Source of the DNA: Mytilus trossulus
Lineage: Eukaryota
Assembly (NCBI RefSeq): GCF_036588685.1
Contig: NC_086374.1
Location: forward strand, 22,320,001 to 22,384,000
Direction of reading: 5' to 3'
Length of the DNA: 64,000 nt
Positions 712 through 63,353 of this stretch are shown in pieces (position 1 is the first letter of the stretch; each line of letters begins with the position of its first letter). The translations under genes were made by a program, and so were the position numbers. The notes beneath the pieces were generated by a model. That model did not search any database and had not been told where the DNA came from. It worked only from the letters and a program-made list of their open reading frames with translations.

Positions 712-974
712 CTTGAAAGGCTCATCAAAAACAACTTCATCGTCATTGTAAACAATAATTCGGACAGTGTCAACCTCTTCTGTTACTACAATTACATCCA
801 TAATTGATTCCGGTTCATCCCATGTCAATACAACGGTTGGTGTTTCATCATCAGGTGCTGGGGTCCATCCTTCAGGTTCAAGAACTTGATCTGCCTCAGT
901 TGGATTAGATGATGTGGTCACTTTTTCAACATCTACTAGTTCAGATACCGTATTTACTGGACACTCCATGATAG
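712..974 (-). CDS. Type III domain exon a, copy 4 (partner exon b expected beyond the window start)
   Basis: 263 bp, phase 1-0. Confidence 0.85.
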
Positions 975-39900: not shown

Positions 39901-42900
39901 TAATAGACTAAAATAATACTGACGGGATCTTTTAAAGTACAGAGTCACGTAATAAGAACAAAAGAAATACAAAGATTCGCATATACAAAACAAATCACCA
40001 AAAAATGAAAGCCAATACACACACATTGACGAGATGTATAAGTACCGAGCCACGTCAAACGGATATCACATAAAACCATTCAACAGTAAAAGTAATATTA
40101 ATAATAGAACAAAGACAAATGAAAGAACAGTAAAACATGTTGTTAAGATGATAAACAACATCAGTACGCAGAATCTATACATCAAGACCATCGTGTATTA
40201 TTTGAGAAGTTGATAAAGCTTGCAATAATTTTGAAATTTACAGTAATTTGTATAAACACAAACATCGACAGTACAACATAGCATACCACCCGACAGTACT
40301 CGATAACACCGAAATAGAAAAAAAATGTATAAATGACAAAGAAATTACCTGTTGTTGTCAAAACGGTTGTTGTTGATGAAACTGTTGGTGTAGTTTCAGA
40401 TGTTATGACAGTAGTTTCTGTAGTTGACGATGGTGTTGTAGTGATAGTGGTAGTACTAGGTTGTGTCAATATAGAACTAGTAACACTTGGAGTTGTTACG
40501 ACACTGGTTCCAGTTGTTAGTGTCGTTGATGTGGTAGGAGCTTTTGTTGTAATAGCAGTAGTTGTTTCTGTGAAAAATGATTCAATAAATATCAGAACAT
40601 ATAAAAGAAAAACAATGACGAGACGTGTTTCATAAGAAGTGAAAATATGAGTCATCAATTTGAATCCAAAACCCAAGAAAATTCCACATAACCAGTGTTC
40701 CCAAAACAACAAAAAAATTTATCAACTCAAAGATGTCTAAATAAAGTCATTAAAGTAGACAGCATATACTACTAAAAACTGAATTACTGACAGTATGAAT
40801 CTATACAAAACGGAAAGAGTAATATTTACACTTATCCCACACGAAGAAAGAAGATAATGAAACGAAGCACTCTTTTATAAAAAAAAATGTTCATTTATAT
40901 ATAAATAATACATAAATTCAATAATTACTTACCAATCTCTTCGAAACATGCCTTAATTACTACATTACTAATTGTTGTTGTCTCATCAGTAGTGTCTGGT
41001 TTAATAATCAATTCGATGATGTTTCCAGGTTTTCCACCTAGACTGATAGGACTGTCAAAATTGTCAACCTGCAAAAGAAAGTAATTTCGTATGATCATCT
41101 ATGCGTCATCTCGTTGCTTAAGGGCTTTGTTGGAGAATTCTTATGATGCGCTTGTTTATCAAAGTACTTCTTAGCAGAAACTTTATTACTCAATATTTCG
41201 TTCTAAAAATTGACGAAATAAAAGATCGTATTACTTACAGGTATTCTATCTATTACAGTTGTATCCTGTTTGATTTTCACAATTACAGATTCAACATTGG
41301 TTTCATCAAAAGTTATGGAGTACAATTGTGATGTATCATCTTCATCGTTTATCTTAAAGATAAGTTTAGGGTTTTCGTCTGTATCAGCTGGACTCCATCC
41401 TTTTGGTTTCTGTGAATCTGATGGTAGATCCCCTGGAGCATTAGAAGAACTATCTACTGTGACATCAGATGGTTGGGATCCATCCAACATGACTTTAACG
41501 CACTCTATAATAAACAAAGACATATCCTCGTGTATAATCAAAAGACAACATTTAAATGAGTAAAGAAACATGATTACAATCATTAGCAGATACTGGAGAT
41601 ATATATATATATATATCAATTGTTTGACGTGTAAAAATTTAACGGTTAATTTGTTTTCTTCAAGCTAAATTTAAATCTACTTTAAATGATTAAATGAACA
41701 ATTAAAAGAATATTTGATTCCTGTTTTCCACACTCAGGACGTAATTTTACATTTTACGCAAAAGCAAAGTCTTCTTCGACATTGAACAAGTCATATTGAG
41801 TGCTGATTTATGTATCAGATATCACAATGCAAGTTCTTTTTATTTTGAAACTCACCAAGATACATTTTTCGCAATAATAAAAAGCTTGCAATAATTTCGA
41901 AATTTACAGTAATTTGTATAAACACAAACATCGACAGTACAACATAGCATTACACCCGACAGTACTCGTCAACACCGAAATAAAAACAAATATAAATGAC
42001 AAAGAAATGACCTGTTGTTGTCAAAACGGTTGTTGTTGAAGAAACTCTTGGTGTAGTTTCAGATGTTATGACAGTAGTTTCTGTAGTTGACGATGGTGTT
42101 GTAGTGATAGTTGTAGTAGTAGGTTGTGTCGATACAGAACTACTAACACTTGGAGTTGTTATGACACTGGTTCCAGTTGTTTGTGTCGTTGATGTGGTAG
42201 GGGCTTTTGTAGTAATAGCAGTAGTTGTTTCTGTGAAAAATGATTCAAAAAATATCAGAACATATACAAGAAATACAATGACGAGACGTGTTTCATAAGA
42301 AGTGATAAAAAAATAAATCATCAATTGAATTCATAAAGAAAACAGAGAATTCCAAACAAGCATTGTTCCCAAAGCAACAAACTATTTTATCAATTCAAAG
42401 ATGTCTTAATACGTCCATCAAGGTAAAAGGCATATACTATGGAAAACTGAATTACTGACATTATGAATATATACAAAACGGAAAGAGTTTTATTTCCACT
42501 TATTCTACTCTGTAAAAAACACAAAATAATGAATCGAAGCACTCTTTTATAAGAAAAATGTTCATTAATATATAAATAATACATAAAGTCAATAATTACT
42601 TACCAATCTCTTCGAAACATGCCTTAATAACCACATTACTAATTGTTGGTGTCTCATCAGTAGTGTCTGGTTGAATAATCAATTCGATGATGTTTCCAGG
42701 TTTTCCACCTAGACTGATAGGACTGTCAAAGTTGTCAACCTGCAAGAGAAAGTATTTTCGTATGATCATCTATGCGTCATCTCGTTGCTTAAGGGTTTTG
42801 TTGGAGATTTCTTATGATGCGCTGGTTTATCAAAGTACTTCTTAGCAGAAACTTTATTACTCAATATTTCGTTCTAAAAATTGACGAAATAAAAGATCGT

Positions 42901-45900
42901 ATTACTTACAGGTATTCTATCTATTACAGTTGTATCCTGTTTGATTTTCACAATTACAGATTCAACATTGGTTTCATCAAAAGTTATGGAGTACAATTGT
43001 GATGTATCATCTTCATCGTTTATCTTAAAGATAAGTTTAGGGTTTTCGTCTGTATCAGCTGGACTCCATCCTTTTGGTTTCTGTGAATCTGATGGTAGAT
43101 CCCCTGGAGTATTAGAAGAACTATCTACTGTGACATCAGATGGTTGGGATCCATCCAACATGACTTTAACGCACTCTGTAATAAACAAAGACATATCCTC
43201 GTGTATAATCAAAAGACAACATTTAAATGAGTAAAGATACATGATTACAATCATTAGCGGATACTGGAGATATATATATATATATATCAATTGTTTGACA
43301 TGTTCAAGTTTGACGGTTAATTTGTTTTCTTTAAGTTCAATTTAAATCTACTTTCAATGATTAAATGAACAATTAAAAGAATATCTGATTCCTGTTTTCC
43401 ACACTCAGTACGTTATTTTACATTTTACGCAAAAGCAAAGTCTTCTTCGACATTGAACAAGTCATATTGAGTGCTGATTTACGTATCAGATATCACATTG
43501 CAAGATCTTTTTATTTTGAAACTCACCAAGATACATTTTTCGCAATAATAAAAAGCTTGCAATAATTTCGAAATTTACAGTAATTTGTATAAACATAAAC
43601 ATCGACAGTACAACATAGCATTACACCCGACAGTACTCGTCAACACCGAAATAAAAACAAATATAAATGACAAAGAAATTACCTGTTGTTGTCAAAACGG
43701 TTGTTGTTGAAGAAACTCTTGGTGTAGTTTCAGATGTTATGACAGTAGTTTCTGTAGTTGACGATGGTGTTGTAGTGATAGTTGTAGTAGTAGGTTGTGT
43801 CGATACAGAACTACTAACACTTGGAGTTGTTACGACACTGGTTCCAGTTGTTTGTGTCGTTGATGTGGTAGGGGCTTTTGTAGTAATAGCAGTAGTTGTT
43901 TCTGTGAAAAATGATTCAAAAAATATCAGAACATATACAAGAAATACAATGACGAGACGTGTTTCATAAGAAGTGATAAAAAAATGAATCATCAATTTGA
44001 ATTCATAAAGAAAACAGAGAATTCCAAACAAGCATTGTTCCCAAAGCAACAAACTATTTTATCAATTCAAAGATGTCTTAATACGTCCATCAAGGTAAAA
44101 GGCATATACTATGGAAAACTAAATTACTGACATTATGAATATATACAAAACGGAAAGAGTGATATTTCCACTTATTCTACTCTGTAAAAAACACAAAATA
44201 ATGAATCGAAGCACTCTTTTATAAGAAAAATGTTCATTAATATATAAATAATACATAAAGTCAATAATTACTTACCAATCTCTTCGAAACATGCCTTAAT
44301 AACCACATTACTAATTGTTGGTGTCTCATCAGTAGTGTCTGGTTGAATAATCAATTCGATGATGTTTCCAGGTTTTCCACCTAGACTGATAGGACTGTCA
44401 AAGTTGTCAACCTGCAAAAGAAAGTATTTTCGTATGATCATCTATGCGTCATCTCGTTGCTTAAGGGTTTTGTTGGAGATTTCTTATGATGCGCTGGTTT
44501 ATCAAAGTACTTCTTAGCAGAAACTTTATTACTCATTATTTCGTTCTAAAAATTGACGAAATAAAAGATCGTATTACTTACAGGTATTCTATCTATTACA
44601 GTTGTATCCTGTTTGATTTTCACAATTACAGATTCAACATTGGTTTCATCAAAAGTTATGGAGTACAATTGTGATGTATCATCTTCATCGTTTATCTTAA
44701 AGATAAGTTTAGGGTTTTCGTCTGTATCAGCTGGACTCCATCCTTTTGGTTTCTGTGAATCTGATGGTAGATCCCCTGGAGCATTAGAAGAACTATCTAC
44801 TGTGACATCAGATGGTTGGGATCCATCCAACATGACTTTAACGCACTCTATAATAAACAAAGACATATCCTCGTGTATAATCAAAAGACAACATTTAAAT
44901 GAGTAAAGAAACATGATTACAATCATTAGCAGATACTGGAGATATATATATATATATATCAATTGTTTGACGTGTAAAAATTTGACGGTTAATTTGTTTT
45001 CTTCAAGCTAAATTTAAATCTACTTTAAATGATTAAATGAACAATTAAAAGAATATTTGATTCCTGTTTTCCACACTCAGGACGTAATTTAACATTTTAC
45101 GCAAAAGCAAAGTCTTCTTCGACATTGAACAAGTCATATTGAGTGCTGATTTATGTATCAGATATCACAATGCAAGTTCTTTTTATTTTGAAACTCACCA
45201 AGATACATTTTTCGCAATAATAAAAAGCTTGCAATAATTTCAAAATAAACAGTAATTTGTATAAACATAAACATCGACAGTACAACATAGCATTACACCC
45301 GACAGTACTCGTCAACACCGAAATAAAAACAAATATAAATGACAAAGAAATTACCTGTTGTTGTCAAAACGGTTGTTGTTGAAGAAACTCTTGGTGTAGT
45401 TTCAGATGTTATGACAGTAGTTTCTGTAGTTGACGATGGTGTTGTAGTGATAGTTGTAGTAGTAGGTTGTGTCGATACAGAACTACTAACACTTGGAGTT
45501 GTTACGACACTGGTTCCAGTTGTTTGTGTCGTTGATGTGGTAGGGGCTTTTGTAGTAATAGCAGTAGTTGTTTCTGTGAAAAATGATTCAAAAAATATCA
45601 GAACATATACAAGAAATACAATGACGAGACGTGTTTCATAAGAAGTGATAAAAAAATGAATCATAAATTTGAATTCATAAGGAAAACAGAGAATTCCAAA
45701 CAAGCATTGTTCCCAAAGCAACAAACTATTTTATCAATTCAAAGATGTCTTAATACGTCCATCAAGGTAAAAGGCATATACTATGGAAAACTGAATTACT
45801 GACATTATGAATATATACAAAACGGAAAGAGTTTTATTTCCACTTATTCTACTCTGTAAAAAACACAAAATAATGAATCGAAGCATTCTTTTATAAGAAA

Positions 45901-48900
45901 AATGTGCATTAATATATAAATAATACATAAAGTCAATAATTACTTACCAATCTCTTCGAAACATGCCTTAATAACCACATTACTAATTGTTGGTGTCTCA
46001 TCAGTAGTGTCTGGTTGAATAATCAATTCGATGATGTTTCCAGGTTTTCCACCTAGACTGATAGGACTGTCAAAGTTGTCAACCTGCAAGAGAAAGTATT
46101 TTCGTATGATCATCTATGCGTCATCTCGTTGCTTAAGGGTTTTGTTGGAGATTTCTTATGATGCGCTGGTTTATCAAAGTACTTCTTAGCAGAAACTTTA
46201 TTACTCAATATTTCGTTCTAAAAATTGACGAAATAAAAGATCGTATTACTTACAGGTATTCTATCTATTACAGTTGTATCCTGTTTGATTTTCACAATTA
46301 CAGATTCAACATTGGTTTCATCAAAAGTTATGGAGTACAATTGAGATGTATCATCTTCATCGTTTATCTTAAAGATAAGTTTAGGGTTTTCGTCTGTATC
46401 AGCTGGACTCCATCCTTTTGGTTTCTGTGAATCTGATGGTAGATCCCCTGGAGCATTAGAAGAACTATCTACTGTGACATCAGATGGTTGGGATCCATCC
46501 AACATGACTTTAACGCACTCTGTAATAAACAAAGACATATCCTCGTGTATAATCAAAAGACAACATTTAAATGAGATACATGATTACAATCATTAGCGGA
46601 TACTGGAGATATATATATATATATATCAATTGTTTGACATGTTCAAGTTTGACGGTTAATTTGTTTTCTTTAAGTTCAATTTAAATCTACTTTCAATGAT
46701 TAAATGAACAATTAAAAGAATATCTAATTCCTGTTTTCCACACTCAGTACGTTATTTTACATTTTACGCAAAAGCAAAGTCTTCTTCGACATTGGACAAG
46801 TCATATTGAGTGCTGATTTACGTATCAGATATCACATTGCAAGATCTTTTTATTTTGAAACTCACCAAGATACATTTTTCGCAATAATAAAAAGCTTGCA
46901 ATAATTTCGAAATTTACAGTAATTTGTATAAACATAAACATCGACAGTACAACATAGCATTACACCCGACAGTACTCGTCAACACCGAAATAAAAACAAA
47001 TATAAATGACAAAGAAATTACCTGTTGTTGTCAAAACGGTTGTTGTTGAAGAAACTCTTGGTGTAGTTTCAGATGTTATGACAGTAGTTTCTGTAGTTGA
47101 CGATGGTGTTGTAGTGATAGTTGTAGTAGTAGGTTGTGTCGATACAGAACTACTTACACTTGGAGTTGTTACGACACTGGTTCCAGTTGTTTGTGTCGTT
47201 GATGTGGTAGGGGCTTTTGTAGTAATAGCAGTAGTTGTTTCTGTGAAAAATGATTCAAAAAATATCAGAACATATACAAGAAATACAATGACGAGACGTG
47301 TTTCATAAGAAGTGATCAAAAAATGAATCATCAATTTGAATTCATAAAGAAAACAGAGAATTCCAAACAAGCATTGTTCCCAAAGCAACAAACTATTTTA
47401 TCAATTCAAAGATGTCTTAATACGTCCATCAAGGTAAAAGGCATATACTATGGAAAACTGAATTACTGACATTATGAATATATACAAAACGGAAAGAGTG
47501 ATATTTCCACTTATTCTACTCTGAAAAAAACTCAAAATAATGAATCGAAGCACTCTTTTATAAGAAAAATGTTCATTAATATATAAATAATACATAAAGT
47601 CAATAATTACTTACCAATCTCTTCGAAACATGCCTTAATTACTACATTACTAATTGTTGTTGTCTCATCAGTAGTGTCTGGTTTAATAATCAATTCGATG
47701 ATGTTTCCAGGTTTTCCACCTAGACTGATAGGACTGTCAAAGTTGTCAACCTGCAAGAGAAAGTAATTTCGTATGATCATCTATGCGTCTCTCGTTGCTT
47801 AAGGGCTTTGTTGGAGAAATCTTATGATGCGCTGGTGTATCAAAGTACTTCTTAGCTGAAACTTTATTATTCAATATTTCGTTCGAAAAATTGACGGAAT
47901 AAAAGATCGTATTACTTACAGGTATTCTATCTATTACAGTTGTATCCTGTTTAATTTTCACAATTACAGATTCAACATTGGTTTCATCAAAAGTTATTGA
48001 ATACAATTGTGATGTATCATCTTCATCGTTTATCTTAAAGATAAGTTTAGGGTTTTCGTCTGTATCAGCTGGACTCCATCCTTTTGGTTTCTGTGAATCT
48101 GATGGTAGATCTCCTGGAGCATTAGAAGAACTATCTACTGTGACATCAGATGGTTGTGCTCCATCCAACATAACTTTAACGCACTCTGTAATAAACATAG
48201 ACATATCCTCGTGTATAATCAAAAGACAACATTTAAATGAGTAAAGATACATGATTTCAATCATTAGCAGATACTGGAGATATATATATATATATATCAA
48301 TTGTTTGACATGTTAAAGTTTGACGGTTAATTTGTTTTCTTTAAGTTCAATTTAAATCTACTTTCAATGATTAAATGAATAATTAAAAGAATATTTGATT
48401 CCTGTTTTCCACACTCAGTACGTTATTTTACATTTTATGCAAAACCAAAGTCTTCTTCGACATTGAACAAATCATATTGAGAGCTGATTTATGTATCAGA
48501 TATCAGAATGCAAGATCTTTTTATTTTGAAACTCACAAAGATACATTTTTCGCAATAATAAAAAGCTTGCAATAGTTTTGAAATTTACAGTAACTTGTAT
48601 AAACATAAACATCGACAGTACAACATAGCATTACACCCGACAGTACTCGTTAACACCGAAATAAAAACAAATATAAATGACAAAGAAATTACCTGTTGTT
48701 GTCAAAACGGTTGTTGTTGATGAAACTCTTGGTGTAGTTTCAGATGTTATGACAGTAGTTTCTGTAGTTGACGATGGTGTTGTAGTGATAGTTGTAGTAG
48801 TAGGTTGTGTCGATACAGAACTACTAACACTTGGAGTTGTTACGACACTGGTTCCAGTTGTTTGTGTCGTTGATGTAGTAGGAGCTTTTGTAGTAATAGC

Positions 48901-49946
48901 AGTAGTTGTTTCTTTGAAAAATGATTCAAAAAATATCAGAACATATAAAAGAAATACAATGACGAGACGTGTTCCATAAGAAGTGAAATAATGAGTCATC
49001 AATTCGAATTCATAAAGAAAACAGAGAATTCCAAACAAGCATTGTTCCCAAAGCAACTAACTATTTTATCAATTCAAAGATGTCTTAATACAGCCATCAA
49101 GGTAAAAGGCATATACTACTGAAAACTGAATTACTGACATTATGAATATATACAAAACGGAAAGAGTGATATTTACACTTATTCTACTCTGTAAAAAACA
49201 CAAGAAAATGAAACGAAGCACTATTTTCATAAGAAAATTGTTCATTAATATATAAATAATACATAAAGTCAATGATTACTTACCAATCTCTTCGAAACAT
49301 GCCTTAATAACCACATTACTAATTGTTGGTGTCTCATCAGTAGTGTCTGGTTTAATAATCAATTCGATGATGTTTCCAGGTTTTCCACCTAGACTGATAG
49401 GACTGTCAAAGTTGTCAACCTGCAAGAGAAAGTAATTTCGTATGATCATCTATGCGTCATCTCGTTGCTTAAGGGCTTTGTTGGAGAATTCTTATGATGC
49501 GCTTGTTTATCAAAGTACTTCTTAGCAGAAACTTTATTATTCAACATTTCGTTCTAAAAATTGACGAAATAAAAGATCGTATTACTTACAGGTATTCTAT
49601 CTATTACAGTTGTATCCTGTTTGATTTTCACAATTACAGATTCAACATTGGTTTCATCAAAAGTTATTGAGTACAATTGTGATGTATCATCTTCATCGTT
49701 TATCTTAAAGATAAGTTTAGGGTTTTCGTCTGTATCAGCTGGACTCCATCCTTTTGGTTTCTGTGAATCTGATGGTAGATCCCCTGGAGCATTAGAAGAA
49801 CTATCTACTGTGACATCAGATGGTTGTGCTCCATCCAACATGACTTTAACGCACTCTGTAATAAACAAAGACATATCCTCGTGTATAATCAAAAGACAAC
49901 ATTTAAATGAGTAAAGATACATGATTTCAATCATTAGCAGATACTG

Positions 49947-50007
<61 letters not shown>

Positions 50008-53000
50008 ATTGTTTGACATGTTAAAGTTTGACGGTTAATTTGTTTTCTTTAAGTTCATTTTTAATCTACTTTCAATGATTAAATGAACAATTAAGGGGGC
50101 TCCTGGGTATAAATGATTTTTTTTTTTCTAATATAGGATTTCGCTATATTTTTTCATAAATAAACTTTATCATATACTTAAAAGAAAAATGAAATAAAAA
50201 AATTGGGTCACCGTTCATTTAAGCTAAAATCTGCCTCTGGAAGAAGCATACATTTTTGTTAATGTTTCTGTTGAACTAATAGGAGAAAAAGAGGAAATAT
50301 CGAAATAAAAAAATAAAAAAATAAAAAAATATAAGAAATCGCTTTAATGTTACAATTATTTAGTTTATGTACAGCTTATTTGAAAACAATAATAAAAAAT
50401 ATAGGTCACCGATGAGTTAAAAAATATATTTCAAATTTAAGGCCAAAAAATGGCTTTTTTGCACCAAAGGGAGATAATTTGGAGCTTTTTCAATTTTCAA
50501 AGTCATCTGGGGCCAAACCAAATCATTGTTTTGGGTTGTTTTTTGTACCATTTCATAAAGTAACAACTAATAGTGTAATAAATAAAATTTGTAATGACAA
50601 AATAAAGGTTGAATTTTTTGCTAAAATTTTTGTACCCACGAGCCACATTAAAAGAATATTTGATTCCTGTTTTCCACACTCAGTACGTTATTTTACATTT
50701 TACGCAAAAGCAAAGTCTTCTTCGACATTGAACAAGTCATATTGAGTGCTAATTTATGTATCAGATATCAGAATGCAAGATCTTTTTATTTTGAAACTCA
50801 CAAAGATACATTTTTCGCAATTATAAAAAGCTTGCAATAATATCAAAATTTACAGTAACTTGTATAAACACAAACATCGACAGTACAACATAGCATACCA
50901 CCCGACATTACTCGTTAACACCGAAATAAAAACAAATATAAATGACAAAGAAATTACCTGTTGTTGTCAAAACGGTTGTTGTTGAAGAAACTCTTGGTGT
51001 AGTTTCAGATGTTATGACAGTAGTTTCTGTAGTTGACGATGGTGTTGTAGTGATAGTTGTAGTAGTAGGTTGTGTCGATACAGAACTACTAACACTTGGA
51101 GTTGTTACGACACTGGTTCCAGTTGTTTGTGTCGTTGATGTAGTAGGAGCTTTTGTAGTAATAGCAGTAGTTGTTTCTGTGAAAAATGATTCAAAAAATA
51201 TCAGAACATATAAAAGAAATACAATGACGAGACGTGTTTCATAAGAAGTGAAAAAATGAGTCATCAATTTGAATTCATAAAGAAAACAGAGAATTCCAAA
51301 CAAGCATTGTTCCCAAAGCAACAAACTATTTTATCAATTCAAAGATGTATTTAATACGTCCATCAAGGTAAAAGGCATATACTACGGAAAACTGAATTAC
51401 TGACATTATGAATATATACAAAACGGAAAGAGTGATATTTACACTTATTCTGCTCTGTAAAAAACACAAGAAAATGAAACGAAGCACTCTTTTTATAAGA
51501 AAAATGTTCATTAATATATAAATAATACATAAAGTCAATGATTACTTACCAATCTCTTCGAAACATGCCTTAATAACCACATTACTAATGGTTGGTGTCT
51601 CATCAGTAGTGTCTGGTTTAATAATCAATTCGATGATGTTTCCAGGTTTTCCACCTAGACTGATAGGACTGTCAAAGTTGTCAACCTGCAAGAGAAAGTA
51701 ATTTCCTATGATCATCTATGCGTCATCTCGTTGCTTAAGGGCTTTGTTGGAGAATTCTTATGATGCGCTGGTTTATCAAAGTACTTCTTAGCAGAAACTT
51801 TATTATTCAATAATTGTTCTAAAAATGGTCGAAATAAAAGATCTTATTACTTACAGGTATTCTATCTATTACAGTTGTATCCTGTTTAATTTTCACAATT
51901 ACAGATTCAACATTGGTTTCATCAAAAGTTATGGAGTACAATTGTGATGTATCATCTTCATCGTTTATCTTAAAGATAAGTTTAGGGTTTTCGTCTGTAT
52001 CAGCTGGACTCCATCCTTTTGGTTTCTGTGAATCTGATGGTAGATCCCCTGGAGCATTAGAAGAACTATCTACTGTGACATCAGATGGTTGTGCTCCATC
52101 CAACATGACTTTAACGCACTCTGTAATAAACAAAGACATATCCTCGTGTACAATCAAAAGACAACATTTAAATGAGTAAAGATACATGATTTCAATTATT
52201 AGCAGAAACTGGAGATATGAATATATATCAATTGTTTGACGTGTAAAGTTTGACGGTTCATTTGTTTTCTTTAAGTTAAATTTAAATCTACCTTAAATGA
52301 TTAAATGAACAATTATAAGAATATTTGATTCCTGTTGTCCACACTCAGTACGAAATTTTACATTTTACGCAAAATCAAAGTTTTCTTCGACATTGAACAA
52401 GTCATATTGAGTGCTGATTTATGTATCAGATAACAGAATGCAAGTTCTTTTTATATTGAAACTCACCAAGATGAATTTTTCGCAATAATAAAAAGCTTGC
52501 AATAATTTCGAAATTTACAGTAACTTGTATAAACATAAACATCAGTACAACATAGCATACCACCCGACAGTACTCGTTAACATCGAAATAAAAAAAATAT
52601 AAATGACAAAGAAATTACCTGTTGTTGTCAAAACGGTTGTCGTTGATGAAACTCTTGGTGTAGTTTCAGATGTTATGACAGTAGTTTCTGTAGTTGACGA
52701 TGGTGTTGTAGTAATAGTTGTAGTAGTAGGTTGTGTCGATACAGAACTACTAACACTTGGTGTTGTTACGACACTGGTTCCAGTTGTTTGTGTCGTTGAT
52801 GTGGTAGGGGCTTTTGTAGTAATAGCAGTAGTTGTTTCTGTGAAAAATGATTCAATAAATATCAGAACATATAAAAGAAATACAATGACGAAACGTGTTT
52901 CATAAGAAGTGAAAAAATGAGTCATCAATTTGAATCCATAAAAAAAACAGAGAATTCCAAACAAGCAGTGTTCCCAAAGCAACAAACAATTTTATCAACT

Positions 53001-56000
53001 CAAAGATGTCTTAATACAGCCATCAACGTAAACGGCATATACTACTGAAAACTGAATTACTGACAATATGAATATATACAAAACGGAAAGAGTCATATTT
53101 CCATTTATTCTACTCGGCAAAAAACACAAGAAAATGAAACGAAGCACTCTTTTGTAACAAAAATGTTCATTAATATATAAATAATACATAAAGTCAATGA
53201 TTACTTACCAATCTCTTCGAAACATGCCTTAATAACCACATTACTAATGGTTGGTGTCTCATCAGTAGTGTCTGGTTTAATAATCAATTCGATGATGTTT
53301 CCAGGTTTTCCACCTAGACTGATAGGACTGTCAAAGTTGTCAACCTGAAAGAGAAAGTAATGTCTTATGATCATCTATGCGTCATCTCGTTGCTTACGTG
53401 TTTTGTTGGAGAATTCTTATGATGCGCTGGTTTATCAAAGTACTTCTTCGCAGAAACTTTGTTATTCAATATTTCGTTCTAAAAATGGTCGAAATAAAAG
53501 ATCTTATTACTTACAGGTATTCTATCTATTACAGTTGTATCCTGTTTAATTTTCACAATTACAGATTCAACATTGGTTTCATCAAAAGTTATGGAGTACA
53601 ATTGTGATGTATCATCTTCATCGTTTATCTTAAAGATAAGTTTAGGGTTTTCGTCTGTATCAGCTGGACTCCATCCTTTTGGTTTCTGTGAATCTGATGG
53701 TAGATCCCCTGGAGCATTAGAAGAACTTTCTACTGTGATATCAGATGGTTGTGCTCCATCCAACATGACTTTAACGCACTCTGTAATAAACAAAGACATA
53801 TCCTCGTGTATTATCAAAAGACAACATTTAAATAAGTAAAGATACATGATTACAATCATATGTAGATACTGGAGATATATATATTTCAATTGTTCGACAT
53901 GGTAAGGTTTGACGGTTAATTCAGTTTCTTTAAGTTAAATGTAAATCTACTTTCAATGATTAAATGAACAAGTAAAAGAATATTTGATTCCTGTTTTCCA
54001 CACTCAGTACCTAATTTTACATTTTACGCAAAAGCAAAGTCTTCTTCGACATTGAACAAGTCATATTGACTGCTGATTTATGTATCAGATATCCGAATGC
54101 AAGTTCTTTTTTATTTTGAAACTCGCAAAGATACATTTTTCGCAATAATAAAAAGCTTGCAATAATTTCAAAATAAACAGTAATTTGTATAAACAAAAAA
54201 ATCGACAGTAAAACATAGCATACCACCCGACAGTACTCGTTAACACCGAAATAAAAAAAATATAAATGACAAGAAATTACCTGTTGTTGTCAAAACGGTT
54301 GTTGTTGAAGAAACTCTTGGTGTAGTTTCAGATGTTATGACAGTAGTTTCTGTAGTTGACGATGGTGTCGTAGTGATAGTTGTAGTAGTAGGTTGTGTCG
54401 ATACAGAACTACTAACACTTGGAGTTGTTACGACACTGGTTCCAGTTGTTTGTGTCGATGGTGTGGTAGGGCCTGTTGTAGTAATAGCAATAGTTGATTC
54501 TGAAAAAGTTCAAAAAAGTGTGAGAACATATCAGAAATGTTTTGTAAAACATTAATTAGGCATTAACGCAAAATGTTCTTAAAAGGTTAAAGTAAATATG
54601 TCTTTAAACTGAGTTTATCTTTTTCCAGATTTATTGTGTTTAAAATAAGAACAAATATGATGCGTTTAGGTATGAGAATTACATGCTGCGCTACACTTGA
54701 TATTTTATTTGAGATGACGAAAATATTGTTAAGCGATTAGGATATGTCTCATCTATGTTAAATTGGTTATATATCAGCTTATCTATGGTGAAAAAAAGCC
54801 CACACCTTATCTTTTGAATAGTGGTTAAAATATGCCTTATCTACCGTATTGTGATTAAAAAAATGCGTGGTATAGTTTATATTGGTTAGAATACTCATTA
54901 TTTATGGTAAAGTGGGTAAATTTCAGCTTACCTATGGTAAAGTGGTAAGAATGAGAATCTATGAACTAGTTAATAGAATAAATCTTATATATGGAATAGT
55001 GGTTAAAAAAAAAGTAAAAATTAGTAGGTCTTACGGAAGTACAATACTTCAACTGTTTAGTATTGTATCAAGTAAAAGCTAGATAAATTGAAGGTGAAAA
55101 ATAATATGCATACCACTTGTTGTTGAGGAAGGCGTTGTGGTTGATCTTGGTATTGTGTGAGTTGTTTTCATTGGTTTTGTTGTTGTTTCTGTAAAGAAAT
55201 ATAAAATATATTGAATTGTACTTATAAAGCTTTATGATTTTTTATAAATAAACATGCATAGAAGTAAAATCAACGATATCAGACTTAATCTTTAACTTCA
55301 AAGGAAAAAGCCTTTCACAAAGTTTACATTCCTAAATTTGTTAAAAGAGTTTAACAGATTTCTATTTATGGTATTTAACTGTAGTATGTGCTTACAGTTC
55401 TTTATGTTAAGATTCATAGGATATGAAACGGTTCTTCTACGCTACAGGAACATCACAAATTTATTATCTTTGGATTTGTCAATAGTGTTTCCTAGTTTAG
55501 TGTCATTTGTAATATCATATTTCAAAATAGAAATTCAAAATGTACACATCTAATATTGAAATGGAGGTTTCCCTTGTGCGCTACTGAGTCATTATTGTCA
55601 ATGAACAGATAATGTTTGTTTTATCTGTATCTCCAACAGAATTATATAAATAAATTAAAATTGTGGTCTAGTATGAATAAATTATATGCTCGTCTTTGTG
55701 TGTGTGTGTGTATGTGTAATATATATGTAATATATATGCATATTCTATTACTAATATCATTTCAACTGATCGGGCGGAGCTTACGTTTTAATTTGCATAA
55801 GGACAGTCTATTTGAAGATGTGTGTGATAAGGATGATTGCCGTTATAATTATTACTGATTTCTAATCACCTATCAGTGTCATTAAAGGAATTTACAAAAC
55901 AATAACTGGACACTTCATTGATGAGTTTATTCTAAATAACCTATCTATAGATGGACTAGTTTATTATGAGCGAACCGGTTAAACTCCGCCTAGTCAAGTG

Positions 56001-59000
56001 AAATAAATTGAGTAATACTGACGATGAAAGGTAACACTTAGTTCGTGCTTGGTGACCTAGTGGTCTAGAGCGCTAGACACAGTGCAGGCAGAGTTTTCTC
56101 GATATCCCAATACCATTATTTCGAATCCCGACGAGGGAAAAACATTGAGATTCTGATAATTAACGTAATAATATATATAAAATATATAAATATTTAAGAA
56201 TATAAATTAAACACTATAATAAATACATTAAAAAGTTTGATTAGATTTTAAAATTATAGACAAACTAGCTTCATCATGTGTATGCATCTCTCAAGGGTGA
56301 ATATATATGATAATCAAGTCTATAAGGGTACAACGTCACCAAAAATTCAAAATCATAATCAAATGACATTTTGAATATAAGTTTTAGCATAGCAATGTTA
56401 ATGTTGCAATAGTCTCTCATATATGTACTTGGTCACATTCTAAATAAAACATCATATCTGCAGAACTACAAAAATGGTTTGTAAAATATAGAAATACCTT
56501 CATTTCATAGGAGCATATTAAAAATAGGGTGGAAAGTTTCATGCATCCGAAGCACTTTTCAGAGTTAATCTTTATCATTCAAATAGTCAAAAGCCACTAA
56601 TATATTTTTACCGAAACATGTATGAAGTATTTGATCCAAAGGGACCAAAAGTAAAGTACAATTTTAGTAAAATTTGGATGAATGATGTGAAACCTTTATA
56701 ACTTTGTCAACACATGTCAAACGTGTGAATATAAAGGAGATTTTACCAGGTAATGTTTTGACATTTGTTGTTTTCATGTGTGTTGTTTGACGCCTAGTCG
56801 TCGCTGCCGTGGTACCACCAGCAGTTGTTACTGGTTCGGTTGTTCCCTCTGTTGATATTAATCCTGTTGTACCGAAACTTGTACTTTCTAAAATCAGATA
56901 TCATCGTTATAAATGATCAATACGTTATTGTTAAACTGGTTATCAATTATGAATTTTGTAACCTCAAGTAAATGAAAAGATGTTTTAGACATGACGTCAA
57001 TAACCTGTATACATCATTAATGTAAAATTTTCTTATGCAACTCTAAGTAAATGGTTGTGAGTAACGTGGTTACAGAAACTGCCTACCCTGCAGAAGAATC
57101 TTATGGATTTTTTTCTTGTTTTGTGTTGCATACTTTTTCTTTTCTTTGTCTTAGTTGTCCCTACGTCTTTTTCCGCTATGGAGTTGCATGTCTTTTCTCA
57201 TTTCTCATTAATGTCTCCCCCCATATTTCTCGACGTATCCGATGCCATTTTTAAAAGTCTTCTAGAAAATTGAATCTGTTGGCCATTTTAAGCTTTCAGT
57301 AACTCTCATATCGGTACTTAGTGTACTTTGTCTTTCTAATAATTATGTAAGTGCTTTATGATGCCCTAATTGGTAAATTTCCAAATTATTTCAGCAGTTT
57401 GATCCTATGTCGTGTTTTTACACCACTGTTCAAGGTTTTGATAAGGGTTGGGTCCTCACAGACATGTTCAACCCCGTCACATTCTGTATATGCCTGTCCC
57501 AAATAGAAAGCCTGTATTTCAGAGGTTGTAAGTCGTTACTGTCTGTCATAAGTGCTTTGCGTTTATTGTTTTGTAATAAAATCAGGCCATTATCATTTTA
57601 AATTTTCACATTTTGTCATGTCTGTGCCTTTTATAATTGAGTAAACGTTATGGGTTTTGCACACTTTTGAAGATCGTGCATGTGATATTGCATAAAAATT
57701 ATTAATTTTGGAGAAAAGTTTTCCATTACTGTCAAGTCAATAACTTTTACCTCTTCTGGTAGTTTTAGTAAACTCGACAGTTGTTTCTATTCCTGTTGAT
57801 GGTGTTCCACCTGTTGGTGTAGGTTCCGTTGGTGTAGTTGGACTAGTTTGTGTTGATGGGGATGGTGTTGTTTCGGAATATGTTATGACTCTTGTAGTTG
57901 TCTCAGTTTGTGGAATACTTGTTGTTGTTGGTGTAGTTGTACTAGTTGTTGTTGATGGGGATGGTGTTTCAGACTGAGTTATTACTCTTGTAGTTGTCTC
58001 AGTTTGTGGAATAGTTGTTGTTGTTGGTGTAGTTGTACGAGTTGTTGTTGATGGAGTTGGAGTTTCAGACTGAGTTATTACTCTTGTAGTTGTCTCAGTT
58101 TGTGGACTACTTGTTGTCGTTTGTACAGTTCCAGTAGCCCCTGTTGTTTTACCTCCAGCTGTTGTTATAGGTTCTGTTGGTGTATTTGGACTAGTTTGTG
58201 TTGATGGGGATGGTGTTTCAGACTGAGTTATTACTCTTGTAGTTGTCTCAGTTTGTGGAATACTTGTTGTTGTTGGTGCATTTGTACTAGTTGTTGTTGA
58301 TGGAGTTGGTGTTTCAGACTGAGTTATGACTCTAGTAGTTGTCTCAGTTTGTGGAATACTTGTTGTTGTTGGTGTAGTTGTACTAGTTGTTGTTGATGGA
58401 GTTGGAGTTTCAGACTGAGTTATTACTCTTGTAGTTGTCTCAGTTTGTGGACTACTTGTTGTCGTTTGTACAGTTCCAGTAGCCCCTGTTGTTTTACCTC
58501 CAGCTGTTGTTATAGGTTCTGTTGGTGTATTTGGACTAGTTTGTGTTGATAGGGATGGAGTTTCAGACTGAGTTATTACTCTTGTAGTTGTCTCAGTTTG
58601 TGGAATACTTGTTGTTGTTGGTGTAGTTGTACTAGTTGTTGTTGATTGAGTTGGAGTTTCAGACTGAGTTATTGCTCTTGTAGTTGTCTCAGTTTGTGGA
58701 CTACTTGTTGTCGTTTGTACAGTTCCAGTAGCCCCTGTTGTTTTACCTCCAGCTGTTGTTATAGGTTCTGTTGGTGTATTTGGACTAGTTTGTGTTGATG
58801 GGGATGGAGTTTCAGACTGAGTTATAACTCTAGTAGTTGTCTCAGTTTGTGGAATACTTGTTGTTGTTGGTGTACTTGTACTAGTTGTTGTTGATTGGGA
58901 TGGTGTTTCCGACTGAGTTATTACTCTTGTAGTTGTCTCAGTTTGTGGACTACTTGTTGTCGTTTGTACAGTTCCAGTAGCCCCTGTTGTTTTACCTCCA

Positions 59001-61347
59001 GCTGTTGTTATAGGTTCTGTTGGTGTATTTGGACTAGTTTGTGTTGATGGGGATGGAGTTTCAGACTGAGTTATGACTCTAGTAGTTGTCTCAGTTTGTG
59101 GAATACTTGTTGTTGTTGGTGTAGTTGTACTAGTTGTTGTTGATTGAGATGGTGTTTCCGACTGAGTTATTGCTCTTGTAGTTGTCTCAGTTTGTGGACT
59201 ACTTGTTGTCGTTTGTACAGTTCCAGTAGCCCCTGTTGTTTTACCTCCAGCTGTTGTTATAGGTTCTGTTGGTGTCGTTGGACTAGTTTGTGTTGATTGG
59301 GATGGTGTTGTTTCAGAATACGTTACAATTCTTGTTGTTGTCTTTGTTGTTGGAATACTTGTTGTTGTTTGTACAGTTCCAGTAGCTCCTGTTGTTACAC
59401 CTTCAGCTGTTGTTATAGGTTCTGTTAAGAAAAGAGGCAAATGATTAATTTCATATAATTATTGATGGTTATTTTGTGTTGCTTTTTATTAATTAATCGT
59501 TTCTTCTTATTCATGTCACAAAACGATACAATAATGCTATTTTGATTTTAAACTGATAAAAAATGAAAGCAGTGGTGAAGCACGAAAGCAGCAAACTCCG
59601 TGTTGATAGGAATTTTTTTTTCGTAAAATTATAACATGCTGATAATTAATTTTTAGAATGAAGGTATGTCAGTATGAGAATGTTGTGACATTTAAAATTT
59701 TTGTGAGGCTCTGGACAACAAACTCATTGGTGACATTTCCATTATTGTTTGTTTTAAATTGTATGCCAAAGAAAGAACACTGATCCAAGATATGTACATT
59801 GGAGCTTGCTGTTTCCTTGTCTACACATGATCTGACAATATGTTAAATAAAATGATATGATGACAATACGCATAGCATTGATATGATGAAATATAAATAA
59901 TCCATGAGACAAGATAATGAATATATACAGTAATGAATACGATAGTGAACATACAAGTATGAGTATGTTGTTGTTTTCATTTTTCTTTGTAAGGCTCTGG
60001 ACAACATACTCAATAGCTGCAGTTCCATGATTAAAAATGAATAAACATTAATTAGTACCCCAAAACAGGTAAAATAATACGTACCATCCTGAGGCAGCAT
60101 GAAGTTCAATGTTAATGTTACAGACATGCAAGGCATAAATTACTATACATACCTTCTTGACCTGAAAGTAATAGAATTAAGAGTATGTTTACCTGTTTAT
60201 ACATACCCGGGAATCCATCTGTGTTAACACCATTCATGTAGGAATTCCTAAACATAAATTTCGTTCTATCAAAAGTGTACCTGTCAAAAAATTAGAACAT
60301 GTTTATGTCATTAACTATACTTACCTTGCTACTTACCATTTCGTGTAACGTTCTTCGTTGGGCCACTGTAAGCCATAGTAAATCCTTTGCGACCATTTGA
60401 CATTATGTTCTTCACAAAGCCATGGTAAGCCATAATGGGCCATTTGCGATCACATAATTTCCTTTGCTGTTCCATGGTTAACCAAAGGCACATCTGACAG
60501 TCGTTCTCTTTCGTCTTACTTCTAATCTCAAAACAATAAAGATTGAACATACAAACGTGAAAATTTTAGACTATCATAAAATTATACCATACATACTTAC
60601 CTAGTACCACGCCATTTCCATCGGTCATAGATGTTACAGTAATGATCCGCTGGTAAGCTTCTTCTACAAGTGAAATGACAATGTTATTTGTTATCAGATA
60701 ATAGCACAGTTAGCACACAATTTCCATTGCGGCAGGCCATGGGTAATTTAACATTTGCATATATATTTTATCTTAGGCTCTCAACGTGTATGTATCGTTA
60801 ATGATTTCCATTGGTTTTAATAGTGGTATGTATACAAAAGCATATACCAATGACAATGAGGCCGTTGTTGCTTCTGTTAAAGGATTTTCATTCTTCTACT
60901 TGTAAATTACTTATACAAGTTCGATAATGCCAATAGTATTACTCTCTATCTAATCTCGATTGTTTCATTATAATTTTTCAATTGTTGGAGAAGAGAAATA
61001 CCGTATCACTTTTGATGCTGGGTAGAATCTGAATAAAATCCCCTAATTTTGTAGTTATCTTCTTTCCATAGCCTTACATTACGAGAACATGAATCTATAT
61101 CAAAATAAAACAACATAATGAGATAGTGATGTGCATTCTCGATGAAATTGTTATAAATTATTTCTTTTCCATTCGGTTTTGTTTAGACTGACACGATTGT
61201 ACTTTGTTTCAAAGTTCATCGGAAGACACCAAGACCTTGTTGATAAATATTCCGTATCAACTTCACAATAATACACGATGGTCTTGAAGTATAAATTATA
61301 GGTACTGTCTTTTATTTATCTTTGTGAATATTACTAATACTGTTTAA

Positions 61348-61381
<34 letters not shown>

Positions 61382-63353: not shown

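What the first reader, a model, noticed from the sequence alone, without database searches (positions are those of the whole stretch)
712..63353. A ~6,000-aa (partial) beads-on-a-string mucin: PTS linkers alternating with 20 folded two-Cys domains
Seen in sequence: the exon chain gives PTS557-PTS47-PTS25-[T73-I]x10-PTS51-VNTR1494-I-T73-I-T58-T36-T20-II-T-II-T-III-T-II-T-III-T-II-T-III-T-III..., with no frame conflict or stop. Established: PTS domains are O-glycosylated, and vertebrate MUC5AC/MUC5B interrupt them with CysD domains. Inference: here a different domain with only two Cys plays the interrupting role at high copy number, giving a multivalent lectin-like or cross-linking mucus/matrix polymer. 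I do not recognise this architecture as a named gene. The ORF track shows it only as disconnected fragments.
Basis: partly seen in the sequence, partly recalled or inferred. Interest (0 to 1): 0.8.

Follow-up and report, generated by a model that had tools for sequence, protein, structure and literature searches.

The report
Giant mussel mucin with discoidin-like beads
The window holds most of one very large minus-strand mussel gene for a secreted mucin-like protein, in which sugar-coated linkers alternate with 24 small folded domains shaped like sugar-binding (discoidin/CBM32) modules, a design that has automatic database names but no study I could find.

Summary
On the minus strand, phase-compatible exons encode about 5,900 residues inside the window: three 5' PTS exons, ten [73-aa PTS + domain] units, a 4.5-kb repeat exon (30 bp x 145), then ten more domains separated by short PTS exons. 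Each domain is two exons, 134-138 aa, with exactly two Cys. There are 20 in the window and 4 more just downstream.

New here:
- The fold, predicted on a complete homologous domain (pLDDT 95), is the galactose-binding-like jelly roll. It matches CBM32, F5/8C and fucolectin structures at Z about 14. Pfam has no model for it.
- The gene continues 21 kb past the window into a TSP1/TIL/VWC region ending in a cystine knot, collinear with Mytilus proteins auto-named "mucin-2-like" and "SCO-spondin".
- I found no VWD domain nearby, and a candidate signal-peptide exon sits directly before the first PTS exon. So it is not a canonical gel-forming mucin.
- Contigs of one public run, which behave like cDNA, confirm five splice junctions and link the type I block to the type II block.
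- A paralogue 1.8 Mb away has at least 57 domain units. A crinoid protein has the same plan with true F5/8C domains.

Glycan binding by the beads is inferred, not shown. I class it as a new variant of a known kind.

The parts
60153..60204 (-). Candidate first coding exon, a signal peptide (MYKQVNILLILLLSGQE plus one base) with a phase-1 GTATGT donor, 730 bp upstream of the PTS557 acceptor
   Evidence: Scan for ATG + hydrophobic run + phase-1 donor and the sequence itself. Inferred only: no read evidence and no signal-peptide predictor was run.
57751..59421 (-). PTS557 exon (about 557 aa, 65% Pro/Thr/Ser, higher-order repeats of 96/249/345 bp)
   Evidence: (acceptor ttcttaacag|, donor |gtaaaagt).
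56747..56887 (-). PTS47 exon, phase 1-1
55114..55188 (-). PTS25 exon, phase 1-1
33835..54499 (-). Ten tandem units of [T73 PTS exon + type I domain (exon A 266 nt + exon B 136 nt)]. T73 exons start at 54499, 52837, 51176, 48911, 47240, 45573, 43901, 42230, 40567, 37115. A exons start at 53780, 52120, 49855, 48185, 46519, 44847, 43175, 41504, 38626, 36386. B exons start at 53344, 51685, 49419, 47750, 46083, 44411, 42739, 41068, 38194, 33970. The tenth domain is diverged (82% in A, 56% in B).
   Evidence: The 1.67-kb genomic units, introns included, are 93-98% identical to each other.
33067..33219 (-). PTS51 exon, phase 1-1
28412..32893 (-). VNTR exon: 1,494 codons, 30-bp unit (STSAATQPSV-type) x 144.6 copies, G+C 43-45% against about 31% around it
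24829..27941 (-). Type I domain (A 27941-27676, B 27162-27027), T73 (26657-26439), type I domain (A 25940-25675, B 25500-25365), T58 (25002-24829)
   Evidence: Spliced contigs confirm the junctions 25675/25500 and 25365/25002.
23359..23466 (-). It is open and phase 1-1, but doubtful.
   Evidence: weak donor gttaga. It has zero depth in run X1, and a contig joins exon T20 directly to a T73/T58-type 3' end.
22353..22412 (-). T20 PTS exon that links the type I block to the type II/III block
   Evidence: Contig joints 22412 to an upstream T exon, and 22353 to 21820.
712..21820 (-). Eight type II/III domains separated by 19-28-aa PTS exons. II: A 21820-21558, B 21073-20923. T: 20239-20180. II: A 19579-19317, B 18495-18345. 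T: 17422-17336. III: A 16630-16368, B 15488-15338. T: 14392-14333. II: A 13478-13216, B 12717-12567. T: 11953-11894. III: A 11497-11235, B 10365-10215. T: 8905-8846. II: A 7811-7549, B 5370-5220. T: 4018-3959. III: A 3107-2845, B 2345-2195. T: 1545-1486. III: A 974-712, with its B exon outside the window.
   Evidence: The junction 21558/21073 is confirmed by a spliced contig.

Best explanation
This is one gene for a secreted glycoprotein of about 7,400-7,500 residues.

Shown:
- Minus-strand exons with matching phases encode PTS stretches alternating with 24 copies, in three subtypes, of a 134-138-aa domain with two Cys.
- Downstream exons encode a Cys-rich tail with VWC-like, six TSP1, two TIL, VWC and cystine-knot modules.
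- A complete homologous domain folds with high confidence as a galactose-binding-like (discoidin/CBM32-type) beta-sandwich.
- Five of the splice junctions are seen in spliced contigs of a public run.

Inferred:
- A 17-residue signal peptide sends the protein into the secretory pathway.
- The PTS stretches become densely O-glycosylated, extended rods.
- Each bead is pinned by a disulfide between its first and last strand, as in F5/8 type C domains.
- The C-terminal cystine knot makes tail-to-tail disulfide dimers, as in mucins, VWF and SCO-spondin.
- With no N-terminal VWD assemblies, a network would have to form non-covalently. The many beads would bind glycans on the same or other mucins, or on captured algae and bacteria. 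That would give a multivalent, reversibly cross-linked mucus or matrix polymer.

The arrays grew by recent tandem duplication of whole exon-intron units.
For: - Exon chain, phases and splice sites.
- Spliced contigs with GT..AG borders at exactly the predicted positions (21073/21558, 21820/22353, 25002/25365, 25500/25675), plus a joint from T20 to a T73/T58-type exon. Depth is zero in introns except over one repeat.
- Four more domains and the Cys-rich tail lie downstream. Pfam gives TSP_1 on 5 exons, TIL at 25.2 and 24.3 bits, and Cys_knot/Sclerostin at E 3e-4 and 5e-5.
- The tail is collinear with the C-terminus of M. galloprovincialis P0041 at 30-60% identity.
- In P0004 (XP_052090877.1) and P0041 the same domain+PTS array is joined to the same tail in one protein model.
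- Fold: AlphaFold2 pLDDT 95, pTM 0.87. Foldseek gives 140 PDB matches at E<=0.001, all of the GBD-like type. VIA-align gives Z 14.6-13 at rmsd 2.0-2.9 A over 113-127 of 132 residues, to CBM32 with galactose (7blg, 2v72), IFT25, BIRC6, fucosidase F5/8C-type domains and fucolectins.
- No VWD match within the fetched C2:22.27-22.41 Mb (the nearest listed hits on C2 are at about 20.09 Mb, on the + strand), although the search finds 122 VWD matches elsewhere in the genome.
- The genomic units are 93-98% identical, introns included.
Against: - No read or cDNA evidence spans PTS557 to T73, the VNTR borders, or the link from the last domain to the Cys-rich tail in this gene. That last link rests on paralogue protein models.
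- The only run available is labelled RNA by guess, comes from an unnamed sample, and is only 90-99% identical to the window.
- The signal peptide is a pattern match only.
- The fold was predicted on a paralogous Mytilus domain (22-38% identical to the window's exon A sequences), because the window's two exons were not joined.
- GBD-like folds also serve as protein-binding modules (DOC/APC10, IFT25, XRCC1-N are among the top matches), so the fold does not prove sugar binding.
- No Pfam GBD-clan model matches the sequence.
- The Cys_knot score (21.4 bits) is below Pfam's cut-off of 24.
Confidence: 0.65

Rival explanations
1. The gene and architecture are the same, but the beads are not lectins. 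They would be inert, protease-resistant, non-glycosylated spacers or protein-protein interaction modules that set the stiffness and spacing of a lubricating or structural mucin.
For: Top structural neighbours include non-lectin GBD folds: IFT25, BIRC6, HERC2/APC10 DOC and XRCC1-N. Only C, GW, P and V are invariant across the three subtypes. I take those to be structural residues, which is my inference; no sugar-site motif could be identified.
Against: The closest small extracellular matches are sugar-bound CBM32 and fucolectin modules. Extracellular discoidin-type domains are usually ligand-binding (own knowledge). High copy number and three conserved subtypes fit avidity-based binding.
Confidence: 0.28
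2. The window holds two or more separate genes. For example, a 5' PTS/type I mucin might end near the VNTR, and a separate type II/III + TSP1/CTCK gene might follow.
For: No reads were laid across the VNTR or the 5' PTS exons. Type I and types II/III share only 31-38% identity. Only one weakly matching run was available.
Against: Every exon from PTS557 to the tail is phase-compatible with no stop. A spliced contig joins a T73/T58-type exon to T20, and another joins T20 to the first type II domain. No second signal-peptide exon or terminal exon was seen between the blocks. Paralogue models join array and tail in one protein.
Confidence: 0.08
3. The near-identical type I units are an assembly artefact, or a decaying pseudogene array, rather than real coding copies.
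For: The units are 93-98% identical, introns included. Such arrays are hard to assemble, and copy number may differ between individuals.
Against: All 24 domain copies keep open frames and canonical splice sites. The copies differ by point changes and by distinct intron insertions (units of 2,265, 2,878 and 2,240 bp). The exons are covered by spliced contigs.
Confidence: 0.04

Closest known systems
Mytilus 'mucin-2-like' XP_052090877.1 (P0004, M. californianus) and M. galloprovincialis 'SCO-spondin' / hypothetical protein (P0040, P0041). These are the paralogue family, also present in this genome at C2:20.50-20.64 Mb.
   Same: They have the same two-Cys domain (HMM E 1e-26 to 1e-28 per copy), alternation with PTS exons, and the same VWC-like/TSP1/TIL/VWC/cystine-knot tail, which is collinear with this gene's tail.
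   Different: They carry one domain subtype with a PTS linker of about 60 aa. This gene has three subtypes, a 557-aa 5' PTS exon and a 1,494-aa VNTR exon. Domain identity to this gene is only 22-38%. Their names are automatic, and I found no experimental study.
Vertebrate gel-forming mucins (MUC2, MUC5AC, MUC5B) with CysD domains
   Same: Huge PTS regions encoded by large repeat exons, PTS interrupted by small disulfide-bonded globular domains, and a C-terminal VWC + cystine knot for dimerisation (PMC7599080 for the assembly mechanism).
   Different: There are no N-terminal VWD-C8-TIL assemblies, so no D3-mediated polymerisation. The interrupting domain is a two-Cys GBD-like jelly roll rather than the Cys-rich CysD. 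TSP1 repeats are present.
SCO-spondin
   Same: Alternating TSP1 and TIL modules, VWC and a C-terminal cystine knot. It also contains an F5/8 type C domain and forms an extracellular fibre (PMC8487547 and own knowledge).
   Different: No EMI, VWD, LDLrA or SCOR modules were found here. SCO-spondin has no long PTS/VNTR regions and only one discoidin domain.
Antedon mediterranea 'uncharacterized protein' (P0044, 4,008 aa; a crinoid)
   Same: The plan is the same: PTS linkers alternate with at least 9 two-Cys domains of 126-140 aa, followed by TSP1 x12, TIL x5, VWC and a cystine-knot-like end.
   Different: Two of its domains pass Pfam F5_F8_type_C (E 3.5e-42). The mussel domains do not, and they match the crinoid domains only weakly (local hhalign E 0.0035 over 81 columns). 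The animal is a deuterostome. Common descent versus convergence is open.
CBM32 / F5/8 type C (discoidin) / F-type lectin domains
   Same: Predicted fold, size and Cys at both ends of the domain. The weak top sequence matches are to the same fucosidase F5/8C-type domain that the fold search finds (E 1.5).
   Different: No significant sequence match to any Pfam or PDB member. The sugar-binding residues are not identifiable.
Xenopus integumentary mucins FIM-A.1 and FIM-B.1, and insect hemolectin/hemocytin (own knowledge, not tested here)
   Same: In the FIMs, PTS repeats are interrupted by small lectin-like or adhesive modules (trefoil, sushi), and FIM-B.1 has a VWF-type C-terminus. Hemocytin combines discoidin domains with VWF-type modules and a cystine knot.
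   Different: The interrupting domains are different (FIMs), or there are no long PTS arrays and VWD is present (hemocytin).

Membership tests
Gel-forming mucins (MUC2/5AC/5B/6/19 type) | Long Pro/Thr/Ser-rich O-glycosylation regions, typically in very large repeat exons | tested here: met
   PTS557 (65% PTS) and the 4.5-kb VNTR exon (30 bp x 144.6, 62% PTS). Glycosylation itself is not testable here.
Gel-forming mucins (MUC2/5AC/5B/6/19 type) | N-terminal VWD-C8-TIL assemblies (D1-D2-D'D3) | tested here: not met
   No Cys-rich open segments in the roughly 34 kb upstream on the gene strand. The PF00094 search of the whole genome gives 122 matches but none within the fetched C2:22.27-22.41 Mb. 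A candidate signal peptide directly precedes the PTS.
Gel-forming mucins (MUC2/5AC/5B/6/19 type) | C-terminal VWC and cystine-knot (CTCK) dimerisation domain | tested here: met
   The terminal exon (L007:8674-9099) matches Cys_knot at E 3e-4 (21.4 bits, below the cut-off of 24) and Sclerostin at E 5e-5. It is collinear with the C-terminus of P0041. The match is marginal by score, and dimerisation is untested.
SCO-spondin | Alternating TSP1 and TIL modules with a terminal cystine knot | tested here: met
   Six TSP1 exons (five scanned; Pfam E 1e-5 to 3e-11), two TIL and a cystine knot.
SCO-spondin | N-terminal EMI, VWD and LDLrA repeat region | tested here: not met
   No VWD nearby. No such exons were seen in the upstream flank by eye. 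LDLrA and EMI were not searched with their own profiles.
F5/8 type C (discoidin) / CBM32, galactose-binding domain-like superfamily | Beta-sandwich jelly-roll fold of about 130-150 residues | tested here: met
   AlphaFold2 model of a complete homologous domain (pLDDT 95). Z 13-14.6 at rmsd 2.0-2.9 A over 113-127 residues to CBM32, F5/8C-type and fucolectin structures. The model is of a paralogous Mytilus domain, not of the window's joined exons.
F5/8 type C (discoidin) / CBM32, galactose-binding domain-like superfamily | Disulfide linking the N- and C-terminal ends of the domain (F5/8C hallmark; own knowledge) | tested here: inconclusive
   There are exactly two Cys, at the second or third residue and about six residues from the end, in all copies.
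F5/8 type C (discoidin) / CBM32, galactose-binding domain-like superfamily | Significant match to the Pfam F5_F8_type_C model (PF00754) or a related GBD-clan model | tested here: not met
   No real Pfam match for the exons or for whole homologues at E<=1-10. The profile against PDB sequences gives a best E of 1.5.
F5/8 type C (discoidin) / CBM32, galactose-binding domain-like superfamily | Carbohydrate (or other ligand) binding at the loop end of the sandwich | not testable with these tools
   This needs recombinant protein and glycan arrays or a structure.

The most novel reading that the evidence does not exclude
The beads are working glycan-binding modules. The protein would then be a 'lectin-mucin': a dimeric, multivalent polymer that gels by bead-to-glycan contacts instead of VWD-mediated covalent polymerisation. 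It could also capture algal or bacterial surfaces directly in bivalve feeding or defence mucus. Together with the nemertean, leech and crinoid relatives, it would define an old bilaterian class of mucus/matrix polymers (PTS + discoidin-like beads + TSP1/TIL/cystine-knot tail), distinct from the VWD-type gel-forming mucins.
Probability: 0.3. Interest if true: 0.75.

Novelty: new variant of a known kind. Interest (0 to 1): 0.58.

Why it matters
Mucus polymers outside vertebrates are poorly known, and bivalve mucus does real work. It captures, sorts and transports food particles and meets microbes first. Soluble mucosal lectins are already implicated in particle selection in oysters and mussels (reviewed in PMC12842671). 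A mucin that carries two dozen sugar-binding-type modules in its own backbone, and lacks the VWD machinery that vertebrate mucins use to polymerise, would suggest a different way to build a gel, through reversible lectin-glycan cross-links. It would also be a direct molecular candidate for particle capture. The bead is a compact, confidently folding domain family with no Pfam model and only 34 matches among 1.84 billion representative proteins, so it needs a family definition. The gene is also a clear case where automatic annotation yields only fragments or misleading names.

Tried and rejected
- Pfam on the domain exons and on whole homologues gave no real family. The REC104/DUF4138-type 'hits' on P0004 have no single stretch that passes and are artefacts of repetition.
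- phmmer and the profile against PDB sequences gave nothing significant.
- The word-index protein search with exon A found only three ORF fragments.
- hhalign of the domain alignment against the whole crinoid protein gave probability 0.7%. HMMER with the same profile found no crinoid domain at E<=10. Only alignment-to-alignment hhalign gave a weak in-register match (E 0.0035), which I treat as suggestive only.
It gives five codons and then a phase-2 donor, though it could be a 5' UTR exon.
- I rejected the canonical gel-forming mucin reading because no VWD lies nearby.
- The contig joint 'goes back 929' (26622 to 25694) does not fall on exon borders, so I treat it as a repeat-induced assembly artefact.
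- Literature searches for a described mussel mucin or SCO-spondin-like protein with this plan found none.
Every search used single exons by reference, and the fold was predicted on a complete domain cut from database protein P0004, with the window's exons as partial alignment rows.

Full report
WHAT IS THERE

The window (G000:C2:22320001-22384000) is AT-rich at about 31% G+C, apart from one 4.5-kb block at 43-45%. All features of the finding lie on the minus strand.

- Exon A is 266 nt. It starts after ...ttacag with AG|TGC (Glu-Cys) and ends ...CCT|gtaagt, so it runs from phase 1 to phase 0.
- Exon B is 136 nt. It runs from ...ttgcag|GTTGAC to ...GAGATTG|gtaagt, so it runs from phase 0 to phase 1.
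- The following 219-nt 'T73' exon is phase 1-1.

tblastn with these exons, and with type II and III exons taken from the window, gave 20 first-exons in the window. These are 12 type I, 4 type II and 4 type III, each with its second exon, all full length and without stops. The exception is the last type III domain, whose exon B lies about 160-310 bp beyond the window start.

Splice borders were refined for every exon. Domains are 134 aa (type I) or 138 aa (types II and III), each with exactly two Cys, one at the N-terminal end and one about six residues from the C-terminal end. All PTS exons are phase 1-1.

My exon table sums to about 17.7 kb of coding sequence, roughly 5,900 codons, inside the window. 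The big exon is 30 bp x 144.6 copies. The 1.67-kb genomic units of the type I array are 93-98% identical, introns included, and the longer units carry intron insertions. This points to recent tandem duplication or homogenisation.

THE ENDS OF THE GENE

I fetched 30 kb upstream and 50 kb downstream.

Downstream, the array continues with II, III, III and a diverged II, giving 24 domains in all. Further PTS exons follow, the last a short one. After that come exons that Pfam recognises as TSP_1 (five exons, E 1e-5 to 3e-11) and TIL (two exons), and a last exon that matches Cys_knot and Sclerostin at E 3e-4 and 5e-5, ending in a stop. A sixth TSP1-like exon and the VWC-like exons were recognised by eye and by alignment.

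These exons are collinear, at 30-60% identity, with the C-terminal 780 residues of M. galloprovincialis protein P0041. That region runs VWC-like, TSP1, TSP1, TIL, TSP1, VWC, TSP1, TSP1, TSP1, TIL, VWC, cystine knot. The whole gene therefore spans about 82 kb and encodes roughly 7,400-7,500 residues by my tally.

Upstream, I saw no Cys-rich open segment in the roughly 34 kb on the gene strand. A whole-genome search with Pfam VWD gives 122 matches, but none within the fetched C2:22.27-22.41 Mb.

The PTS557 exon needs a phase-1 donor. The best candidate is 60204-60153, encoding MYKQVNILLILLLSGQE plus one base and followed by gtatgt. It is preceded by a good acceptor at about 60280. I read it as a signal-peptide exon, which is an inference. 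It may belong to a 5' UTR exon.

TRANSCRIPT EVIDENCE

Only one public run held part of the stretch (X1; RNA by guess).

Its contigs cover exons only and show joints with CT..AC ends, which is GT..AG on the minus strand. The joints are:
- 21073/21558, from IIA to IIB;
- 21820/22353, from T20 to IIA;
- 25002/25365, from IB to T58;
- 25500/25675, from IA to IB;
- one contig from T20 (22412) to the 3' end of a T73/T58-type exon.

The last joint has only 29 letters on one side, and T73 and T58 end identically. It may therefore start from T58 (skipping only T36) or from T73 (skipping a whole domain as well). 'T36' has zero depth and is skipped.

The contigs are 90-99% identical to the window, so they come from another individual or a close species. 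No reads were laid over the 5' PTS exons, the VNTR or the tail, because the tool allowed only one call.

WHAT THE DOMAIN IS

- Pfam gives nothing for the exons, and PDB sequences give nothing.
- The word-index search finds only three ORF fragments.
- A profile of ten exon A sequences, searched by HMMER against 1.84 billion representative proteins, finds only 34 proteins at E<=0.001.
- The long, convincing hits are XP_052090877.1 'mucin-2-like' of M. californianus (P0004, 12 domains), an uncharacterised protein of the nemertean Tubulanus polymorphus (P0006, 7 domains), a leech hypothetical protein (P0033) and an anonymous 916-aa protein with His-rich linkers (P0030).
- The remaining long hits (P0017, P0022, P0028) match only by many weak short stretches and look spurious.
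- No full-length model of the window's own gene appeared.

Because exons were not to be joined, I predicted the fold on one complete domain cut from P0004. The alignment held the nemertean and anonymous domains and the window's exon A and exon B sequences as partial rows. AlphaFold2 gave pLDDT 95 and pTM 0.87, an all-beta sandwich.

Foldseek found 140 PDB matches at E<=0.001, all of the galactose-binding-domain-like fold. VIA-align gave Z 14.6-13 at rmsd 2.0-2.9 A over 113-127 of 132 residues. The matches include:
- CBM32 modules bound to galactose (7blg, 2v72);
- F5/8C-type domains of fucosidases and sialidases;
- fucolectin modules;
- galactose oxidase domain 1;
- the intracellular IFT25, BIRC6, DOC and XRCC1-N domains.

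The best, non-significant, profile hits in PDB sequences are the same fucosidase domain.

Two Cys at the two ends of the domain is the F5/8 type C pattern (own knowledge).

The domain is therefore a divergent, currently unmodelled member of the discoidin/CBM32-like structural superfamily. It is not demonstrably a member of PF00754.

RELATIVES WITH THE SAME PLAN

Three lines of evidence show the plan is not unique to this gene.
- In this genome, a paralogous array at C2:20.50-20.64 Mb has at least 57 units of 2,484 bp, each with exon A, exon B and a PTS exon of about 60 aa.
- P0004 and P0041 join such arrays to the same Cys-rich tail in one protein model.
- Searching with that tail also returned a 4,008-aa 'uncharacterized protein' of the crinoid Antedon mediterranea (P0044). 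It has PTS linkers alternating with at least nine two-Cys domains of 126-140 aa, followed by 12 TSP1, 5 TIL, a VWC and a cystine-knot-like end.

Two of the crinoid domains pass Pfam F5_F8_type_C at E 3.5e-42. The mussel and crinoid domains match only weakly (hhalign E 0.0035 over 81 in-register columns; no HMMER match). Shared ancestry of the whole architecture is therefore possible but not shown.

HOW IT MOST LIKELY WORKS

Shown: the gene structure, the domain fold (on a homologue), the tail's module types, the absence of VWD nearby, and splicing of five junctions.

Inferred from established knowledge of these families:
- The protein is secreted.
- The PTS stretches are densely O-glycosylated.
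- The cystine knot makes tail-to-tail dimers, as in mucins and VWF (PMC7599080).
- Without D-assemblies there is no covalent head-to-head polymerisation.
- A gel or fibre would then have to arise from non-covalent contacts.

The 24 discoidin/CBM32-like beads are the obvious candidates for those contacts. They could bind glycans of the same or other mucins, or of particles and microbes. Mucosal lectins are already implicated in particle sorting in oysters and mussels (PMC12842671), which makes feeding mucus an attractive setting, but the tissue of expression is unknown.

The main rival is that the beads are non-lectin spacers or protein-binding modules, since the same fold does that in DOC, IFT25 and XRCC1.

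COMPARISON AND NOVELTY

- It works like a mucin and shares the CysD-style interruption of PTS and the VWC/cystine-knot end. It fails the defining N-terminal VWD test for gel-forming mucins.
- It shares the TSP1/TIL/cystine-knot logic of SCO-spondin, but I did not find that protein's N-terminal half.
- Database names on its paralogues ('mucin-2-like', 'SCO-spondin') are automatic.
- Five literature searches found no description of this plan. A limpet pedal-mucus protein with 'TSP1 x4, cystine-knot' (P-vulgata_6, PMC7333891) may be related to the tail only.

I rate it a new variant of a known kind: a mucin-like polymer with a new interrupting domain family and no VWD assemblies.

LIMITS

- Only one run and one read-laying run were available.

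Noticed in passing
window 24049-24092 (-), with read depth over 24004-24197: A type I hammerhead-ribozyme-like match (25.2 bits, below Rfam's gathering score of 34; E 0.0011) lies in the intron between T58 and T20. It is the only intronic place covered in run X1, with summed contig word depth of about 35,000 and many variant contigs. It looks like a highly transcribed ribozyme-bearing repeat (retrozyme or SINE-like; own knowledge).
   Followed up: partly
G000:C2:20503000-20641000 (loci L010, L011): A paralogous mega-array of at least 57 tandem units of 2,484 bp on the minus strand. Each unit encodes the same two-exon, two-Cys domain plus a PTS exon of about 60 aa. It is the relative in this genome of Mytilus 'mucin-2-like' XP_052090877.1.
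   Followed up: partly
protein P0044 (Antedon mediterranea, 4,008 aa): A crinoid protein with the same plan: PTS linkers, at least 9 two-Cys discoidin-type domains (two pass Pfam F5_F8_type_C), then TSP1 x12, TIL x5, VWC and a cystine-knot-like end. It is labelled only 'uncharacterized protein'.
   Followed up: partly
protein P0030 (anonymous JGI sequence, 916 aa): It has an N-terminal VWC-like region followed by four copies of the same domain family, separated by strikingly His-rich linkers (HPHDEHHPHDE type). The source organism is unknown.
   Followed up: no
downstream flank: G000:C2:22270001-22291000 and 22274600-22282700 (about 29-50 kb and 37-45 kb below the window start): Two LINE-type reverse-transcriptase ORFs (379 + 466 + 223 aa, and 465 aa) lie here. 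Between them are exons of an M1-family aminopeptidase (leukotriene A4 hydrolase-like, motif HEISHSWTGNLVTN) on the minus strand. These mark the end of the mucin locus.
   Followed up: no
window 41504-38626, 52120-49855 and 38626-36386: Three of the otherwise 1.67-kb type I units are enlarged to 2.2-2.9 kb by insertions in their introns. (TA)n microsatellites sit just upstream of several exon A acceptors.
   Followed up: no
window 22412 joined to 26439 or 24829 (run X1): A spliced contig joins T20 to a T73/T58-type exon end. Depending on which identical end it comes from, the transcript skips T36 only, or also a whole type I domain and T58. Because all modules are phase 1-1, in-frame exon-skipping isoforms are possible.
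   Followed up: partly
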